From positions 186,001 to 250,000 of the IMG/VR virus record IMGVR_UViG_3300042473_001265: a stretch of 64,000 bases of DNA. One strand, given 5' to 3'. The position numbers and the translations under genes are program-made. The notes below the pieces were generated by a model, which did not search any database, was not told the DNA's origin, and saw only the letters and a list, made by a program, of their open reading frames with translations. Below, piece after piece: positions 3 through 17,486 of the stretch (position 1 is its first letter; every line of letters starts with the position of its first letter).

Positions 3-617
3 CTGGCCGCAAGATCTGTTGAAGCTGATCCATATGATGAACAAATTGAAGAAATGCAAGCACAGGCCTTGCAAGAAGTCAGCTACGACACTGTGAACGA
101 GTTTACAAGACTGCAGGAACACCAGGAGTTTTTGTTGAAACTGCTGACCAGCAAGGACAGTTTCATTCGTAAAAAGATCATAGAACAAAATCTAAGTTAC
201 CTGAACACAAGACTCACACACTATCTTGATCGCATTGGATTGCCACACACTGTGGTGTTCCAAAATGATTTGAGCGTGAGCATTGAAGAATTGGGTCGCG
301 AACTGGACTTTGACAATCTGAGTCGTGGCGAACGCAACAGACTTATACTCAGCATGAGTTGGGCATTCCGAGATGTGTACGAAAGTTTGTACCAACCAAT
401 TAATGTGTTGTTCATTGACGAGATGATCGATTCTGGAATGGATACGCAAGGTGTCGAAAACAGCCTGGCCCTGCTCAAGCACATGAGTCGAGAACGTCAC
501 AAGAGTATTTGGCTTGTGAGCCATAGAGACGAATTGGCTGGCCGTGTTGAAAACATTCTCAAAGTGGTGAAAGAAAACGGCTTCACCAGCTATAATACGG
601 ATATTGAACTTGTTTAA
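3..617 (+). CDS. gp46: Recombination endonuclease ATPase subunit (gp46/SbcC/Rad50-like), C-terminal part; gene starts before the window
   Basis: Frame is open from position 3. ABC signature LSRGE, Walker B/D-loop LFIDEMIDSGMD, H-loop LVSHR. Confidence 0.9.
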   Translation: MAARSVEADPYDEQIEEMQAQALQEVSYDTVNEFTRLQEHQEFLLKLLTSKDSFIRKKIIEQNLSYLNTRLTHYLDRIGLPHTVVFQNDLSVSIEELGRELDFDNLSRGERNRLILSMSWAFRDVYESLYQPINVLFIDEMIDSGMDTQGVENSLALLKHMSRERHKSIWLVSHRDELAGRVENILKVVKENGFTSYNTDIELV

Positions 618-1572
618 CTATAAAACAGTACATCTTGAAATCAGTAGCAAATGCGTACTCAAATGTCCGCGCTGCCCTAGGACTGAGTTGAAGTTGGACC
701 GATTAAATCAAGAAATAACACTGAGCGACTTCAAGTCTGGATTTCCAGTGGATGTGCTGAGTCATATTGAACATTTTATATTTTGTGGTGACATTGGTGA
801 TCCAATATATGCTACAGAGTTTTTAGAAATTATACAATACATCAAACAACACAGCAAGATTCGTGTACGCATTGTGACCAATGGCAGTTACAAAAAACCC
901 GAATGGTGGCAACAGTTGGGTGCAATATTAACCGGTAACGATCAGATCACATTCAGTGTTGATGGATGGGACAACCAGTCAAACAATCAATATCGTGTCA
1001 ACAGCGATTTTGAAAGTATTGTATCAGGTATCACTGCGCTGAGAGCATCAAGCAGTTGCGTAATACAATGGTCTGCAATTTATTTTGCGTTTAATCAAGA
1101 CAAAATCAATGACATGCGTGATTTTGCAAAATCTTTAGGGTGCAACCAATTTCAAACTGTTAAAAGTTCAAAGTTTGATAATAGATACCTGGCCGACGGT
1201 ATAGACGAATTAAAGCCTGCCACAGAGTTTGTTGCAAGTACTTTGGTATACGAAACTAGTACAGAATTGTTAAATCAAACTGATTATATACCAATTGTAC
1301 CCAGAACCTCTGAACGGCCACATGCCTGGGCCAAATGTTTAAATTATAAAAAAGATTTGTTTGTTGGAATCAACGGACTAGTAATGCCGTGTCCTTGGTT
1401 CAACAACGGTTACAATGATAACGAGTTTATAAAAAAAAATCATACTCTCATGTCTATCAAAACTCGGCCATTTTTAGAAATAATAAATGATGTCGGTCTA
1501 TGGCAAAAATTACTAGATAGTTTTGATACATCGCCTTTGGAAATTTGTCAATTAAAGTGTAAAAATGGATAA
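604..1572 (+). CDS. Radical SAM protein with C-terminal SPASM/twitch-like Cys motif
   Basis: CxxxCxxC (CVLKCPRC), GDIGDP, TNGS, FSVDG; C-terminal C..PCPW..CxxxC. Confidence 0.85.
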   Translation: MNLFNYKTVHLEISSKCVLKCPRCPRTELKLDRLNQEITLSDFKSGFPVDVLSHIEHFIFCGDIGDPIYATEFLEIIQYIKQHSKIRVRIVTNGSYKKPEWWQQLGAILTGNDQITFSVDGWDNQSNNQYRVNSDFESIVSGITALRASSSCVIQWSAIYFAFNQDKINDMRDFAKSLGCNQFQTVKSSKFDNRYLADGIDELKPATEFVASTLVYETSTELLNQTDYIPIVPRTSERPHAWAKCLNYKKDLFVGINGLVMPCPWFNNGYNDNEFIKKNHTLMSIKTRPFLEIINDVGLWQKLLDSFDTSPLEICQLKCKNG

Positions 1573-2836
1573 TAAAAAAATATTTTGTACAGTACCTTGG
1601 TTTGAAGTTCATGTTAATGCTGACGGAACCTACCATACCTGCGGGGCACAGCCGACACCCAGCAGCATGCCGATGCTGTCGGGATTTACAGAAAAAAATA
1701 ATGTACATTCGATGCATATACAGGACTGGGTCAATGGTGAATACCAAAAAAGAGTCAGACTAGATAAACTCAATGGAGTTTACGAAAAAAGATGTTTGAT
1801 GTGTTATTCAGAAGAGGCCACTGGATCGTCTAGTAAAAGAATTAAAGAAAATTTAAAAAGCAAAATCTACGATGTCAAGTTTGATTTAACTTATAAACAC
1901 AGTCCAGATTTAGCAACCTTTGAGTTTTCAAGGCAAAATCAAGGACTGACTGATATTGTTAAGCCAATCAGCTATCACTTGAATCTTGGTAACGAATGCA
2001 ATTACGCTTGCAAAATGTGCGGACCGGCATGCAGCAGTAAACTAGCAGTTGAAGGAATAAAAGATGGCACATATAGCGGGCCAGCCAAATTAAACTGGAC
2101 CGAAGACACCGCTGCATGGAACTCGGTAACCGATTACATCTGTGCCACCGAAGATTTAAAATATGTTCATATCATTGGTGGCGAGCCACTGTTGAATCCA
2201 CGCTTTGAAGAACTGATTGATAAACTAATAGCAGCCGGCCGAACTGACATCTATTTTGGGTTCACTACAAACGGTTCTATAGTTGATATCAACTTGATTA
2301 AAAAACTAAATGTGTTCAGACATGTTGATATTGGTATCAGTATTGAATGCACCGGAACATTGAATGATTATATTAGAAAAGGTACCCGTACCGCAGAAGT
2401 GTTGGATAATATCGATATCTATTTAAAATATCGAAAAGAATCACATGTGTATGTCACAATCAGAACTGTACCTAGTGCGTTGAGTGTCGGCACTCTAGAC
2501 AGTCTTTATGCCTGGTGTGTAAATCGTCAACTTGATGTTATGACAAATTTATTAGTTAGACCAGATTATTTACAAATAAAAAATTTACCACTAGATGTAA
2601 AACAACGATTAATTAATCAATACGAGCAATGGGAACACAGTAAACCCATTGAAGGTTTTAGTAACCCTCGCGATCCTAACCGATTTAAAGAACACATTGA
2701 CAACGAAATTAATGTGGTACTTAGAAATTTGAAACTGGACAACGATCCAGTTATGACAACAAAATTATACGATATGCTGAAAAAATGGAATTGGCTCAGT
2801 AATCCTGAGATAGCAAAATATTTTGAAACCAAATAA
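1565..2836 (+). CDS. Radical SAM protein with N-terminal SPASM/twitch-like domain
   Basis: N-terminal FCTVPW..TC..CLMC; CNYACKMC; GGEPLL; TTNGS. Confidence 0.88.
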   Translation: MDNKKIFCTVPWFEVHVNADGTYHTCGAQPTPSSMPMLSGFTEKNNVHSMHIQDWVNGEYQKRVRLDKLNGVYEKRCLMCYSEEATGSSSKRIKENLKSKIYDVKFDLTYKHSPDLATFEFSRQNQGLTDIVKPISYHLNLGNECNYACKMCGPACSSKLAVEGIKDGTYSGPAKLNWTEDTAAWNSVTDYICATEDLKYVHIIGGEPLLNPRFEELIDKLIAAGRTDIYFGFTTNGSIVDINLIKKLNVFRHVDIGISIECTGTLNDYIRKGTRTAEVLDNIDIYLKYRKESHVYVTIRTVPSALSVGTLDSLYAWCVNRQLDVMTNLLVRPDYLQIKNLPLDVKQRLINQYEQWEHSKPIEGFSNPRDPNRFKEHIDNEINVVLRNLKLDNDPVMTTKLYDMLKKWNWLSNPEIAKYFETK

Positions 2837-2904
2837 CTGCAAAAATTTATACAAACACACTCAAAGGCATAACTATACAGCAAAGGTAATACAACAGATT
2901 CCGC

Positions 2905-3333
2905 ATGACATGGCACTATCAAAACACCCCAGTTGAGACACTGCCCGAAGAATGCATAGGATTTGTTTACCTGATCACCAATAATCTTTCTGGTCGCAAG
3001 TACATAGGCAAAAAACTAGCTAAATTTTCAAAAACCACTTACAAAACTGTAAAACAAAAAAACGGCATCAAGAAAAAAAAGAAAATTAGAACCAAAATTG
3101 ACAGTGATTGGCGCGAGTACTACGGTTCAAGCGAAAATCTAACTGTTGATGTCAACACCTTAGGCACCGAAAACTTCACCAGAGAAATACTTTACTATTG
3201 CACATCAAAAGCACAATGCAGTTACATTGAAGCTAGAGAACAGTTCAATCGCAAGGTATTGGAATCCACAGATTATTACAACGGCCAGATCTCAGTCAGA
3301 GTTCATGGCTCACACATCATAAACAAAATTTAA
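2905..3333 (+). CDS. Short GIY-YIG family nuclease (Seg-like catalytic domain only)
   Basis: GFVYLITN..RKYIGKK, YYGSS, conserved E (YIEAREQ) and YYN motifs; Lys-rich insert KKKKKIR. Confidence 0.8.
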   Translation: MTWHYQNTPVETLPEECIGFVYLITNNLSGRKYIGKKLAKFSKTTYKTVKQKNGIKKKKKIRTKIDSDWREYYGSSENLTVDVNTLGTENFTREILYYCTSKAQCSYIEAREQFNRKVLESTDYYNGQISVRVHGSHIINKI

Positions 3334-3747
3334 GGCAACACAAACGACACTGTGCCGGATGTTTGATTCGGCTCCATTGAGGAACGGTGAGATACCCGGT
3401 CTGGACTTGGACGTCAAAGGCAATTGCTAACTTAAGGCAACAAATGGTCGGGGCTCTGTGAAACAGATACAACCCCTGCTTATAGGACTTGGATCTATAT
3501 CGGGTTACTAGGGTTCCGTTGATATGTGAAGCTTGAGTAGGGGGTACCGGTCAACCGCCTCCGCGTAGGAAACTACAATCTCATTACTATAGATGACTGC
3601 TGTCACTCGGATGATGCTTTCAATTCACCGTGCATACGGTGAATTATGACCACATAATCTGGATGATACTAATACTTACTTTTCTAATTCAAACAAATGT
3701 CTGAGCGATAGCGATAGACATAGATACACGAAGTGTATCTTGAACTG
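3334..3747 (+). ncRNA. Putative large structured non-coding element (ncRNA or origin); family not recognised, strand inferred
   Basis: Longest ORF-free gap in a gene-dense window. Stem-loops at 3354-3372, 3450-3476, 3565-3576 (GAAA tetraloop), 3622-3645 (perfect 10-bp stem), 3697-3721 and 3722-3740. Confidence 0.55.
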
Positions 3748-4086
3748 TTAGAGATTAGTATCAGGCCAATCTCTAAACAAGGCATGTTGTATAGTTGAAC
3801 AATCTACAAACTGATTAAAGCTCTTGTGTTTGACTTCAAGTTCGCCTTCTAAAGGTGCTACTCTTTTAAATGCCTGATCCATTTGGGCCATGCCTGTGAA
3901 CTCCATGATGATCATCCATTCAGGCATGTCTGCAATGCTACGGAATCCCATCTTGCAGCGGGTGATTCTATAGTTCTCCATGTTGCCTTCAGAGATCAAA
4001 TGATCAAAGAAACTTTTCATGCCCGCGACCCATTCAAGGTCTGTGATGTCGCCTTCTTTGTTTGCCCAAATTGTGTATAAATCCAT
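3748..4086 (-). CDS. Conserved hypothetical protein (DUF6614-like)
   Basis: 112-aa ORF; MDLYTIWA..YRITRCKMGF..PEWMIIMEF..FRDWPD resembles DUF6614 from memory. Confidence 0.6.
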   Translation of the reverse strand: MDLYTIWANKEGDITDLEWVAGMKSFFDHLISEGNMENYRITRCKMGFRSIADMPEWMIIMEFTGMAQMDQAFKRVAPLEGELEVKHKSFNQFVDCSTIQHALFRDWPDTNL

Positions 4087-4088
4087 AG

Positions 4089-4532
4089 TTACTCCAGTGG
4101 TCCTAGTATTTCAAATCCGTCCATGTCAGATTTGTACAAGTGTGCCTGTTCAAGATACAAGTATTCAAACCCTCGTTCCTTGTAGATAGCACACTCTGCT
4201 TTCATTGTTTCAATACCCAGTCTCAGCCGGGGCTTGTGATATGTCCATGCAAATTGATCACACAAGGCATTGTGCTGATCAAATCTGCGTATCAAGCTCC
4301 AGGCTACCAGTTGATCTTGATCAAAGTATCCAATGATGTCTGCCATGGGGTCAAAGTATCGACTGTGAAATATTGGCATTACTGATGCAAAGTGTTTGTA
4401 TGTGCAGTAAGTTTTGTAGATACTGTCCAACTGATCCAGTACTGACGGTTCTCTACTGGTGATATACTGCCACTTGATTGTGGGAACATAGTTGGTCTTG
4501 CTCAAGTCTATTCTAGCAAATTGATAGCTCAT
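4089..4532 (-). CDS. Aminoacyl-tRNA-protein transferase C-terminal (ATE/Bpt GNAT)-like protein
   Basis: GYFDQDQLVAWS..RLGIETMKAECAIYKERGFEYLYL resembles the ATE_C pattern (G.LVAV..SLG...L.EI..A...GL.YLYLG). Confidence 0.6.
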   Translation of the reverse strand: MSYQFARIDLSKTNYVPTIKWQYITSREPSVLDQLDSIYKTYCTYKHFASVMPIFHSRYFDPMADIIGYFDQDQLVAWSLIRRFDQHNALCDQFAWTYHKPRLRLGIETMKAECAIYKERGFEYLYLEQAHLYKSDMDGFEILGPLE

Positions 4533-16577: not shown

Positions 16578-16670
16578 TAAATAACACTAACGCAATACTG
16601 TGTTTTATGCGGCACACCAGCCGCGTAGTAGGCTAGAACCTGCATCGGACTTCTTTAAGGAGAAAACAAA
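16578..16670 (+). promoter_or_regulatory. Late promoter and structured 5' leader
   Basis: TAAATA at 16578-16583; hairpins at 16589-16604, 16606-16627 and 16628-16643; AAGGAG SD. Confidence 0.55.
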
Positions 16671-17486
16671 ATGGGTCGTCCTCTAAAAATTCAAAAATAT
16701 TCTGCCAATTCTGGCATCAACTCACCTGGCGCTGCTGTTGCTATTGACCAGGGTTACAATCCGTTTGCTGCACCCACTGCATTGGACACTGCCACTGTGG
16801 TACTACCAAGCCCGGCAACATCACCATTGCCATTTACCGGCGTGGTTGGCGGTATTGACGGCGCTGGAGTCAGCACTACATATCCCATTGTTTCAGTCAC
16901 TTGCAACATTGAAAACAGCTATTCTGGATCTGCTGCTGGCGCAATTATTCGCCAGAAAGGTTCTCACAAATTCCTAGTGGCCACTACCACTGCTATTGAT
17001 CCTGAAAATGCAGTAGTTGGCGTTGCTCTTCAGATTGCAGTGCTGGGCGATACAGACTGGCAAGCCATGGGTGCTCCAGTTGGCGCCGATGTTGGTACCT
17101 TGTTCACTGCAACAGCAGCCGCAGGCGCAGGCACATCTGGCACAGCATTTGAAGTTGGTCAGTGTGTGTTGGCCAACGATGCAACTCCGGCCGCTGGCGA
17201 AATGAACATTGCAATGGCAGTGTCCAACGACAGTACCAATGTTTACATCAGCAAATTGACCAACAAGTTTGTACAAGACTTCAACGGTGGCGGCACTGGT
17301 GGTGTTGCCAACACTGGCGATGTTTGGGCATACACAGATGTAGTTGACGACATCGAGTATGCAGCTAACTTCTTCACTGACGTGTCTACATTTGCCAAAT
17401 CTGGTGCAGAAGTTGCTACTTGGGCAAGTACTCAACAAAACAGTGATGGCACTTTGGGACTGGCACAAGTTGACAGTACAACCTAA
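16671..17486 (+). CDS. Putative virion structural protein
   Basis: Ala/Gly/Thr-rich; strong SD, late promoter and its own terminator; MGRPLK..IIRQKGSHKFLV. Confidence 0.7.
   Translation: MGRPLKIQKYSANSGINSPGAAVAIDQGYNPFAAPTALDTATVVLPSPATSPLPFTGVVGGIDGAGVSTTYPIVSVTCNIENSYSGSAAGAIIRQKGSHKFLVATTTAIDPENAVVGVALQIAVLGDTDWQAMGAPVGADVGTLFTATAAAGAGTSGTAFEVGQCVLANDATPAAGEMNIAMAVSNDSTNVYISKLTNKFVQDFNGGGTGGVANTGDVWAYTDVVDDIEYAANFFTDVSTFAKSGAEVATWASTQQNSDGTLGLAQVDSTT

What the first reader, a model, noticed from the sequence alone, without database searches (positions are those of the whole stretch)
2905..3747. Minimal GIY-YIG nuclease followed directly by a ~410-nt densely structured non-coding element: candidate nuclease-ncRNA system
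Seen: the longest ORF-free stretch in the window begins at the nuclease stop codon. It contains stacked stems: GCCGGA/TTCGGC 3354-3372; GGGG-TCTG(TGAAA)CAGA-CCCC 3450-3476; GGGGG..CGG(TCAA)CCG..CCTCC 3540-3562; GTAG-GAAA-CTAC 3565-3576; a perfect 10-bp stem 3622-3645; and two terminal hairpins. G-T pairs and a GNRA loop favour a + strand RNA. Seen: the 142-aa protein has the catalytic GIY-YIG motifs and a Lys-rich insert, but no NUMOD or HTH DNA-recognition domain. Established: Seg-type homing nucleases normally carry such domains, while compact nucleases such as IscB and TnpB use an adjacent RNA. Inference: this could be an undescribed ribonucleoprotein in which the RNA scaffolds or guides the nuclease. 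I could not match it to any RNA family I know.
Basis: partly seen in the sequence, partly recalled or inferred. Interest (0 to 1): 0.85.

Follow-up and report, generated by a model that had tools for sequence, protein, structure and literature searches.

The report
Modular structured phage RNA after nuclease gene
The gene-free stretch after the small GIY-YIG nuclease gene encodes a real, highly folded RNA of about 330-400 nt that matches no catalogued RNA family; it nearly always follows a small nuclease gene in a group of uncultured freshwater giant phages, but the evidence does not show that it guides that nuclease.

Summary
Window 3334-3747 is the longest ORF-free stretch, and it encodes a + strand structured RNA (core 3346-3669, plus two terminal hairpins to 3741). 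On 50 homologues, 96.9% of 80 modelled pairs are canonical on the + strand against 86.4% on the - strand. Forty pairs show two-sided compensation, against 23 in permutations. A 7-9 bp pseudoknot covaries. Rfam has no match. The RNA is modular: three unrelated 5' bodies (A as here, B, C) occupy the same slot and share a 3' module. Body C contains the orphan Rfam motif Polynucleobacter-1 (RF01718). The 3' module carries two about 13-nt boxes, 52 nt apart, that stay identical to each other while differing between lineages. No cis partner was found, so this is unexplained. Linkage to a nuclease gene is strong: 78 of 79 RNA-anchored loci have GIY-YIG or, instead, a PDDEXK resolvase-like gene upstream. 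The guide or scaffold idea is nevertheless poorly supported. Both nuclease families occur in hundreds of phages without the RNA. A 99%-identical GIY sits beside a different body and different boxes. ORFs often lie between gene and RNA, and there is no long hypervariable segment. Function unknown; my best guess is a trans-acting RNA co-transcribed with the nuclease operon.

The parts
2905..3333 (+). Short GIY-YIG nuclease gene (142 aa; SegE_GIY-YIG domain only, Lys-rich insert, no DNA-binding domain)
   Evidence: Pfam PF19835, E = 5e-32. phrog_447 matches over the full length. Homologues in 496 GenBank phages are mis-annotated as 'NAD synthetase'. No PDB sequence match.
3346..3669 (+). Core of the structured RNA (body type A plus shared 3' module)
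   Evidence: The nhmmer profile matches 3346-3675. It is conserved at 70-97% nt identity in more than 180 loci. alifold gives 74 pairs, 33 of them compensated.
3346..3415 (+). 5' three-way domain: P1 3346-48/3413-15, hairpin 3355-60/3366-71, and helix 3373-76/3408-11 enclosing hairpin 3381-87/3396-3402
   Evidence: Compensatory changes occur in every helix. The P1 pair 3346-3415 is seen as GC, CG, GU and AU.
3450..3476 (+). Helix GGGG/CCCC with a conserved internal loop
   Evidence: 3 of 4 pairs are compensated; pair 3450-3476 is among the highest mutual-information pairs.
3483..3510 (+). Hairpin H6 (3483-92/3500-10); its loop 3493-3499 forms pseudoknot PK1
   Evidence: 6 of 7 inner pairs are compensated. 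Loop and partner sequences change together over 7-9 bp in about 30 combinations.
3511..3533 (+). Near-invariant joining strand (GGGUUCCGUUGAUAUGUGAAGCU)
   Evidence: Invariant columns in alignment A1. It is also retained in body type C. GUUGAU is complementary to GUCAAC at 3550-55, but both are invariant, so that pairing is untestable.
3534..3583 (+). Central three-way junction: 3534-37/3580-83, invariant hairpin 3540-62 (used as the 21-mer probe), and GNRA hairpin 3565-76
3588..3594 (+). 3' strand of pseudoknot PK1 (pairs with loop 3493-3499)
3603..3615 (+). Box 1 of the 3' module (NNA-CUC-GGAUGAU)
   Evidence: It stays identical to box 2 in about 95% of 159 unique sequences, across more than 12 variants of the 7-mer. 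Positions 3609-3661, 3613-3665 and 3615-3667 are among the top mutual-information pairs with 0% Watson-Crick pairing.
3623..3644 (+). Hairpin H10 between the two boxes
   Evidence: 9 bp, 3 pairs compensated. A different hairpin sequence occupies the same place in types B and C.
3655..3667 (+). Box 2 of the 3' module (NNA-UCU-GGAUGAU), preceded by the invariant UGAC at 3647-50
   Evidence: The type B profile matches window 3595-3742, E = 7e-8.
3692..3716 (+). Terminal hairpin 1: 6-bp covarying stem, tandem G.A, two G-C pairs and a GNRA loop
   Evidence: The G-C to A-U change in the inner pair and the GNRA loop make sense only on the + strand.
3719..3741 (+). Terminal hairpin 2 (8-bp covarying stem). 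It could also act as a terminator for the convergent gene.
   Evidence: No canonical U-tract terminator was detected on the + strand.
3748..4086 (-). Convergent DUF6614 gene (the right-hand neighbour, not part of the RNA)
   Evidence: Pfam PF20319. It is adjacent in only 33 of 76 RNA-anchored loci.

Best explanation
Window 3346-3741 encodes a stable, pseudoknotted non-coding RNA of a previously unrecognised modular family. The family is carried by uncultured freshwater T4-like phages whose contigs reach about 340 kb.

Shown: the RNA is made from the + strand as the distal part of the transcription unit that ends with a small nuclease gene. That gene is a short GIY-YIG here and a PDDEXK_15 resolvase-like gene in other lineages.

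Shown: the RNA has two parts. The first is an exchangeable 5'/central 'body' with three unrelated or partly related versions: A (this window), B, and C, which contains the Rfam Polynucleobacter-1 motif. The second is a common 3' module. In that module two unpaired boxes of about 13 nt flank a hairpin, and GNRA-capped terminal hairpins follow.

Inferred: the RNA acts in trans rather than as the nuclease's guide. The body would be a folded recognition or scaffold domain. The two boxes, kept identical to each other while varying between lineages, would present the same 7-10 nt sequence twice to one partner. That partner is most probably a nucleic acid outside this operon.

Inferred: the neighbouring nuclease is a structure-specific (resolvase or EndoII-like) enzyme that needs no guide. 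The linkage would then reflect shared transcription, and possibly shared timing.
For: Structure and strand.

No known family.

Modularity:
- Type B occupies the same slot in 20 loci and has its own covariation (17 compensated pairs in 12 sequences).
- Type C is found in 31 or more loci and has a full-length RF01718 match (110.9 and 90.6 bits).
- The shared 3' module occurs only in these RNAs.
- The type B profile hits window 3595-3742.

Box identity.

No partner in cis, in the RNA, the GIY mRNA or 400 nt downstream.

Expression: four independent lake and marine metatranscriptomes give contigs over 2865-3672, bridging the stop codon (3304-3536, 3148-3441, 3171-3441, 3298-3441). Coverage is about zero at 2500-2805.

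Nuclease independent of the RNA.

RNA independent of nuclease identity: a 99%-identical GIY lies beside type B; PDDEXK replaces GIY; L163 and L191 have neither.
Against: - No trans target has been identified.
- 78 of 79 RNA-anchored loci keep a nuclease gene upstream, a tighter link than to the downstream neighbour (33 of 76). Replacement of one nuclease fold by another at the same spot could mean functional coupling.
- No promoter or canonical terminator of the RNA's own was found.
- Contig depth over the RNA is not higher than over the GIY mRNA, so a separate stable species is not demonstrated.
- Metatranscriptome contigs cannot exclude DNA carry-over.
Confidence: 0.4

Rival explanations
1. 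Ribonucleoprotein reading. The RNA binds the upstream small nuclease (GIY-YIG or PDDEXK) and scaffolds, targets or restrains it. For example, the two identical boxes could position two nuclease protomers, or could pair with two copies of a short DNA target.
For: - Every GIY gene with enough downstream room is followed by an RNA of this family.
- 78 of 79 RNA-anchored loci have a nuclease gene upstream on the same strand, 62 of them within 250 nt.
- An unrelated nuclease fold occupies the same position in at least 4 lineages.
- Contigs bridge the gene-RNA junction.
- The GIY protein has no DNA-recognition domain.
Against: - Both nuclease families are widespread without the RNA, and the proteins are collinear with no extra domain.
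- A 99%-identical GIY is paired with another body and another box sequence.
- ORFs are inserted between gene and RNA in about a third of loci.
- L163 and L191 lack a nuclease.
- The boxes are only 7-13 nt long, and no matching target was found in the window.
Confidence: 0.2
2. Cis-acting 3' UTR. The structure protects or terminates the nuclease-operon mRNA, or controls its decay or translation, and has no function of its own.
For: - It is on the same strand, lies 8-60 nt after the stop codon in most loci, and is bridged by transcriptome contigs at similar depth.
- It sits at a convergent-transcription boundary with terminal hairpins.
- RF01718 was originally rated as probably cis-regulatory (PMC2864571).
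Against: - The RNA is 330-400 nt long, with pseudoknots and long invariant unpaired strands. That is far more than a stabiliser needs.
- Three alternative bodies are each under strong structural selection.
- The RNA persists when other ORFs or other upstream genes replace the nuclease.
Confidence: 0.15
3. Self-processing RNA or ribozyme. The two identical boxes would be matching cleavage or ligation sites that release or rejoin the 52-nt hairpin segment.
For: - It shares the hallmarks of ribozyme-class RNAs: size, pseudoknots and invariant junction nucleotides.
- The identical boxes flank a hairpin at a fixed spacing in all three types.
Against: - No Rfam ribozyme or intron model matches, even at E up to 10.
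- No junction joining box 1 to box 2 (a 52-nt skip) appears among the joints seen in four transcriptomes, although contigs do drop rare forms.
- There is no exon context for an intron.
Confidence: 0.1
4. DNA-level element. The repeats would be iteron- or operator-like protein sites, or part of an R-loop replication origin, and the RNA structure would be secondary.
For: - Two direct repeats lie about five helical turns apart and evolve in concert, with an AT-rich spacer downstream.
- The position next to the baseplate module recalls T4 ori(uvsY) (my own knowledge, not tested).
Against: - There is strand-specific G-U usage, and compensatory pairs run across the whole 330 nt, including the hairpin between the repeats.
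- No further copies of the box exist in the 64-kb window beyond chance.
Confidence: 0.07
5. Decayed or recoded coding sequence, for example the lost DNA-binding half of a Seg endonuclease.
For: Full-length SegE relatives with NUMOD3 exist (L209, 357 aa).
Against: - No ORF of 30 aa or more on the + strand lies within 3334-3747.
- Substitutions follow base-pairing rather than codon periodicity.
- The short protein is collinear and conserved in hundreds of phages.
Confidence: 0.02

Closest known systems
Polynucleobacter-1 RNA motif (Rfam RF01718; Weinberg et al. 2010, PMC2864571)
   Same: Sibling RNAs (body type C; L105, L072 and at least 29 more loci) sit in the same slot after the same GIY gene. 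They carry a full-length RF01718 domain, followed by the same central hairpin (GGUACNGGNCAACCGCCUC) and the same 3' module as the window's RNA. The habitat is the same (fresh water), and the function is likewise unknown.
   Different: The window's RNA (type A) has no RF01718 match at all; its 5' domain is a different fold. RF01718 describes only 141 nt and was thought to be cis-regulatory. The 3' module, the pseudoknot, the phage origin and the nuclease linkage were not part of that description.
OMEGA guide RNAs of IscB/TnpB (HEARO RNA) and tracrRNA-type scaffolds
   Same: A large structured RNA encoded next to a compact nuclease gene on the same strand, with an unpaired 3' tail.
   Different: There is no RuvC or HNH effector, no transposon ends and no Rfam HEARO hit. 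There is no single hypervariable guide of 16 nt or more. The variable element is 7-13 nt long and is present twice in identical form. The nuclease families occur widely without the RNA.
Large orphan structured RNAs (GOLLD, ROOL, raiA, OLE)
   Same: Long, pseudoknotted and highly conserved in unpaired junctions. Often phage- or lake-derived, and known from comparative genomics only.
   Different: No sequence or structure match. It is smaller, at about 330-400 nt. It has exchangeable bodies and the identical-box module, which as far as I know are not described for those classes.
Phage group I introns carrying GIY-YIG homing endonucleases (I-TevI type)
   Same: A GIY-YIG ORF next to a folded RNA of about 300 nt in a T4-like phage.
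   Different: The ORF lies outside the RNA. No host gene is interrupted, since the flanks are a stop codon and a convergent gene. No group I model hit appears at E up to 10. The GIY gene is fixed rather than sporadic.
Bacterial sRNAs with repeated seed motifs (e.g. S. aureus RNAIII C-rich loops, CsrB GGA repeats; my own knowledge)
   Same: The same short unpaired sequence is presented more than once by one structured RNA.
   Different: Here the repeated sequence itself changes between lineages while the copies stay identical. No target or binding protein is known.

Membership tests
Rfam RF01718 Polynucleobacter-1 RNA | Match to the covariance model at or above the gathering score (37 bits) | tested here: not met
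   The window has no hit, even at E up to 10. Siblings L105 and L072 score 110.9 and 90.6 bits.
Rfam RF01718 Polynucleobacter-1 RNA | Homology outside the modelled 141 nt (same locus, central hairpin, 3' module) | tested here: met
   The type A profile gives partial hits (profile positions about 120-330) in 27 of 31 type C loci. Alignment.
OMEGA / RNA-guided nuclease systems (IscB, TnpB, Cas9/12) | RuvC and/or HNH effector protein | tested here: not met
   The protein is GIY-YIG only. The alternative neighbour is PDDEXK_15.
OMEGA / RNA-guided nuclease systems (IscB, TnpB, Cas9/12) | A conserved scaffold plus one hypervariable guide segment of about 16-20 nt at an RNA end | tested here: not met
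   The variable unpaired elements are two identical 7-13 nt boxes. The 3' spacer is variable but lies before conserved hairpins.
OMEGA / RNA-guided nuclease systems (IscB, TnpB, Cas9/12) | Nuclease and RNA co-occur obligatorily and co-evolve | tested here: not met
   The co-occurrence is one-sided. Almost every RNA has a nuclease upstream, but the nuclease families are common without the RNA. A 99%-identical GIY lies beside a different RNA.
OMEGA / RNA-guided nuclease systems (IscB, TnpB, Cas9/12) | RNA-dependent target cleavage | not testable with these tools
   Needs biochemistry.
Group I intron | Match to the intron model, an interrupted host gene and splice-site context | tested here: not met
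   No Intron_gpI hit at E up to 10. The flanks are the GIY stop codon and a convergent gene.
Seg-type free-standing homing endonuclease | GIY-YIG catalytic domain of the SegE type | tested here: met
   PF19835, E = 5e-32.
Seg-type free-standing homing endonuclease | C-terminal DNA-binding module (NUMOD or HTH) | tested here: not met
   The 142-aa protein ends 13 residues after the domain. L209 shows what the long form looks like.
Seg-type free-standing homing endonuclease | Sporadic presence or absence among close relatives | tested here: not met
   It is present at this locus in essentially all related contigs and in 496 cultured phages.
CRISPR array | Repeats of 23 nt or more separated by variable spacers | tested here: not met
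   There are two 13-nt boxes, and the 'spacer' between them is a conserved hairpin. The CRISPR-DR hit at E = 6.4 lies elsewhere and is chance.

The most novel reading that the evidence does not exclude
The RNA is the partner of structure-specific phage nucleases. It could be a folded RNA whose two identical boxes pair with a short DNA or RNA sequence twice, building or mimicking a branched substrate for the adjacent GIY-YIG or PDDEXK enzyme. Alternatively it could hold that enzyme in check until late infection. The exchangeable bodies would tune when or where this happens. That would be a nuclease-RNA partnership unrelated to CRISPR or OMEGA systems.
Probability: 0.15. Interest if true: 0.9.

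Novelty: new variant of a known kind. Interest (0 to 1): 0.62.

Why it matters
This is a large, pseudoknotted RNA family with hundreds of members in lake viromes, and it is expressed in lake metatranscriptomes. Three points stand out.

1. It links an orphan Rfam motif (Polynucleobacter-1) to a longer phage RNA and to a defined genomic context.
2. It shows an unusual design: exchangeable folded bodies on a common 3' module.
3. It shows a rare kind of covariation, in which two segments are kept identical rather than complementary. That points to a partner not yet seen.

The near-obligatory position behind small nuclease genes of two unrelated folds gives a concrete hypothesis to test at the bench.

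If the RNA proves to work with the nucleases, it would be a new class of nuclease-RNA system. If not, it is still a new candidate for the short list of large bacterial and phage RNAs with complex folds and unknown biochemistry.

Tried and rejected
- Rfam at gathering and permissive thresholds on the window, type B and divergent members: nothing for types A and B. The RF01718 hit appeared only in type C.
- tRNA/tmRNA scan: none.
- GenBank phage blastn with the window region and with type C: no isolate carries the RNA.
- Bacterial genome scan with the invariant 21-mer: only phage-like MAG contigs are real; the other 11 hits are chance.
- Long-range helix GUCA 3413-16 / UGAC 3647-50, proposed by alifold: rejected. 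3413-15 covaries with 3346-48 instead, while UGAC never varies.
- GUUGAU/GUCAAC pseudoknot: complementary but invariant. The apparent covariation in the 159-sequence alignment is a misalignment artefact.
- T4 gene-60-like bypass (the boxes often read codon plus UGA/UAA): rejected. The frame is closed five codons upstream and no ORF enters it.
- K-turn or C/D-box reading of GAUGA: rejected, because the critical G varies freely.
- Alternative-helix (switch) model for the boxes. I searched for a common complement in the RNA, the GIY mRNA, the inter-box segment and 400 nt downstream, and tested the H6 3' strand. No consistent or covarying partner was found. The ATCATCC about 235 nt downstream is a coding coincidence in DUF6614.
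- Extra copies of the box or the module in the 64-kb window: none beyond chance.
- Sigma-70 promoter and intrinsic terminator scans: nothing convincing.
- PDB sequence search with the GIY protein: no hit.
- Literature searches: no paper describes this RNA. The supplement of the IMG/VR structured-RNA catalogue was not available.
- I did not use the count of structure pairs or build a covariance model, to avoid typing a long structure string. I ran equivalent counts and controls in a script instead.
Full report
WHAT IS THERE

The window comes from a large uncultured freshwater T4-like phage. Contig L081, of 340 kb, is identical over this locus. The local gene order is as follows:
- the 3' end of a gp46/SbcC-like gene;
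- two radical-SAM genes (604-1572 and 1565-2836);
- a 142-aa GIY-YIG gene (2905-3333);
- 414 nt without any ORF;
- on the other strand, DUF6614 (3748-4086), two more small genes and baseplate genes.

The 414 nt are the longest ORF-free stretch of the window. The protein is a SegE-type GIY-YIG domain and nothing else (PF19835, E = 5e-32).

IS THE RNA REAL?

Folding the single sequence is not persuasive (z = -2.6 on the + strand, -2.2 on the - strand). Comparison with relatives is.

I collected loci in three independent ways:
- through the GIY protein (L001-L080);
- through DUF6614 (L081-L160);
- through an invariant 21-mer of the RNA itself (L161-L280).

The region 3346-3669 is conserved at 70-97% nucleotide identity. 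That is at least as high as the neighbouring genes.

On 50 distinct sequences, RNAalifold predicts 74 pairs, and 33 of them keep pairing through changes on both sides. I replaced one unsupported long-range helix with two helices that mutual information revealed. The resulting model has 80 pairs:
- 96.9% of cells are canonical on the + strand, against 86.4% on the - strand.
- 40 pairs show two-sided compensation. Column permutations give a mean of 22.7 and a maximum of 29 in 300 trials. Sliding the partner by 1-3 columns gives 6-13.

The loop of hairpin 3483-3510 and the segment 3588-3594 change together over 7-9 bp in about 30 different combinations. This is a clear pseudoknot.

Long unpaired stretches are invariant, for example 3511-3533 and the hairpin 3540-3562. 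No ORF of 30 aa or more lies on the + strand within the stretch.

The two terminal hairpins covary as well. The first has tandem G.A pairs and a GNRA loop that only the + strand can form.

IS IT A KNOWN RNA?

- Rfam 15 gives nothing over this stretch at the gathering threshold or at E up to 10. The window's only Rfam hit is an unrelated freshwater-2 motif at 16588-16673.
- There is no tRNA or tmRNA.
- No GenBank phage has similar DNA.
- In 185,579 bacterial and archaeal genomes, the invariant 21-mer finds the RNA only on three MAG contigs that look like mis-binned phage.

A MODULAR FAMILY

Eighteen GIY genes seemed to lack the RNA.

Sixteen of them carry a different conserved ORF-free element of about 420 nt in the same slot. 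I call this type B. It is found in 20 loci in all. It has its own compensatory changes: 17 compensated pairs in only 12 sequences.

The other two, and at least 29 further loci that gave only partial profile hits, carry a third version, type C. The 5' domain of type C is a full-length match to the orphan Rfam motif Polynucleobacter-1 (RF01718; 110.9 and 90.6 bits against a gathering score of 37). That motif was described in 2010 from Burkholderiales and from freshwater and estuary metagenomes. It has no known function and no later literature.

Type C shares with type A:
- the central strand and the invariant hairpin;
- the whole 3' module.

Type B shares only the 3' module and the terminal hairpins. 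The type B profile hits window 3595-3742 with E = 7e-8.

In the protein-anchored samples the proportions are roughly 55% A, 25-30% C and 12% B. So every one of the 201 GIY genes with enough downstream sequence is followed by an RNA of this family.

THE 3' MODULE AND ITS ODD COVARIATION

The module reads: UGAC, a short variable piece, box 1 (NNA-CUC-N7), a linker, a hairpin, UGAC, a short variable piece, then box 2 (NNA-UCU-N7).

The strongest non-Watson-Crick signals in the mutual-information analysis are identities between the boxes, at 3609-3661, 3613-3665 and 3615-3667.

More than a dozen versions of N7 occur. Examples are GGAUGAU, AGAUGAU, AGAUAAU, GGAUAAU, AGAUGAA, ACAUGAA in type B, AGAUGAG, and ACGAAAU. 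In about 95% of 159 distinct sequences the two copies are the same, and the identity extends to the three bases before CUC/UCU.

The module occurs once in the window, and only in these RNAs among all loci.

Two segments that must stay identical normally share one partner. I looked for a complementary segment in four places:
- inside the RNA;
- in the GIY mRNA;
- between the boxes;
- 400 nt downstream.

I also tested the 3' strand of hairpin H6. Nothing consistent or covarying was found. The window contains no enriched match either.

I rejected three readings:
- Translational bypass: the frame is closed upstream.
- K-turn or C/D box: the key G varies.
- CRISPR-like array: the 'spacer' is a conserved hairpin.

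The partner is therefore outside this operon, or it is a protein. This remains unexplained.

LINK TO NUCLEASES

Among loci retrieved by the RNA's own 21-mer, with at least 2.5 kb upstream:
- 56 of 79 have the GIY gene within 200 nt on the same strand;
- 15 have it further away, with inserted ORFs between;
- 7 have a 170-aa PDDEXK_15 gene instead (PF24608; phrog 'Holliday junction resolvase'), 6 of them within 250 nt;
- 1 has neither.

(See.) L163, which has 2 kb of upstream room, has a MazG-like gene instead. By contrast, the downstream neighbour DUF6614 is adjacent in only 33 of 76 loci.

Lake and marine metatranscriptome contigs cover 2865-3672. Several bridge the stop codon. Nothing maps to 2500-2805 and little to 3659-3840. 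Depth over the RNA is similar to depth over the GIY mRNA, and no 52-nt-skip junction is seen. This fits co-transcription, but it cannot show a separate stable species or exclude DNA carry-over.

WHY THE GUIDE-RNA READING IS NOT FAVOURED

1. The short GIY-YIG protein is phrog_447, the cyanophage T4-like gene cluster 213. It is present in 496 GenBank phage records (Synechococcus and Prochlorococcus myoviruses, Methylophilales phage Melnitz, Sinorhizobium phiN3 and others) and is usually mis-annotated as 'NAD synthetase'. In Melnitz and P-HM1 there is no RNA of this kind downstream. The proteins are collinear with the window's protein.
2. PDDEXK_15 homologues occur in cultured phages, including the jumbo phages SCTP-2 and PA5oct and Campylobacter T4-like phages. 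In the SCTP-2 region I inspected there is no RNA.
3. L100 has a GIY 99% identical to the window's, yet it is followed by an 89-aa ORF and a type B RNA with different boxes.
4. About a third of loci have ORFs between the nuclease gene and the RNA.
5. There is no guide-like hypervariable segment.

A simpler reading of the two nuclease folds at one position is non-orthologous replacement of a structure-specific, resolvase-like enzyme. Such an enzyme needs neither a DNA-recognition domain nor a guide. This is an inference from the annotations and from what is known of SLX1 and Hjc-type enzymes. It was not tested here.

The near-universal nuclease neighbour still keeps a functional partnership possible. 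I give it about 0.2.

VERDICT

- The proposed mechanism (guide or scaffold of a minimal nuclease) is not supported, and several comparisons weaken it.

The element is best described as a new body variant of a modular phage RNA family. Only one domain of that family (Polynucleobacter-1) had been catalogued, and only as an orphan motif.

My preferred mechanism is a trans-acting folded RNA that presents one short sequence twice. It is an inference, held at about 0.4.

Noticed in passing
window 16588-16673 (+): Full-length match to the Rfam freshwater-2 RNA (RF02980, 64.4 bits). It ends in a ribosome-binding site and an AUG, so it is probably a 5' leader of the downstream gene.
   Followed up: no
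L003:3430-3850 (+), L100:3390-3800 (-) and 18 other loci: Type B: a second, unrelated structured RNA of about 420 nt in the same slot after the same GIY gene. It has its own compensatory changes and no Rfam match.
   Followed up: partly
L105:3140-3630 (-), L072:3427-3990 (+) and 29 or more other loci: Type C: the orphan Rfam motif Polynucleobacter-1 (RF01718) turns out to be the 5' domain of a longer phage RNA that lies behind a nuclease gene.
   Followed up: partly
window 2905-3333 and 496 GenBank phage records (e.g. NC_015280 PHM1_182): The short GIY-YIG family (phrog_447, cyanophage T4-GC 213) is widely annotated as 'NAD synthetase'. That looks like a propagated mis-annotation.
   Followed up: partly
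window 604-2836 and the flanks of most related loci: The region between the gp46-like gene and the baseplate genes is a hypervariable island. It holds different radical-SAM/SPASM genes, a 336-350-aa ORF with no family, and other inserts of about 1 kb on either side of the RNA.
   Followed up: partly
window 4089-4532 (-): This 147-aa protein has no Pfam or PHROG hit. By eye, its C-terminal motif recalls aminoacyl-tRNA-protein transferases. It is strongly syntenic with DUF6614 and a DUF6875-like gene.
   Followed up: no
L281 and L285 (NZ_JBBAKG010000003.1 and ...001.1, Haliscomenobacter MAG); L287 (Flavobacterium MAG): Contigs of 148 kb and 183 kb binned as Haliscomenobacter each carry a near-identical copy of the RNA. 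They are probably phage contigs binned with a bacterial genome, or possibly a hint about the host.
   Followed up: no
upstream of the RNA: window 3331-3345; L163, L213 and L239 upstream flanks: A short AGGCA(A/C) box precedes the RNA 5' end. In PDDEXK-type loci it is repeated two or three times as ACUUAGGCA. It may be a promoter or processing signal.
   Followed up: no
window 3670->3877 (run X7): One metatranscriptome contig joins the end of the RNA core to the inside of DUF6614, skipping 206 nt. This is probably a relative with a deletion or a different spacer.
   Followed up: no
L209:2526-4225: One lineage has a full-length SegE-like endonuclease with NUMOD3 (357 aa), then PDDEXK_15, then a weak partial match to the RNA. 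This is a possible intermediate arrangement.
   Followed up: no
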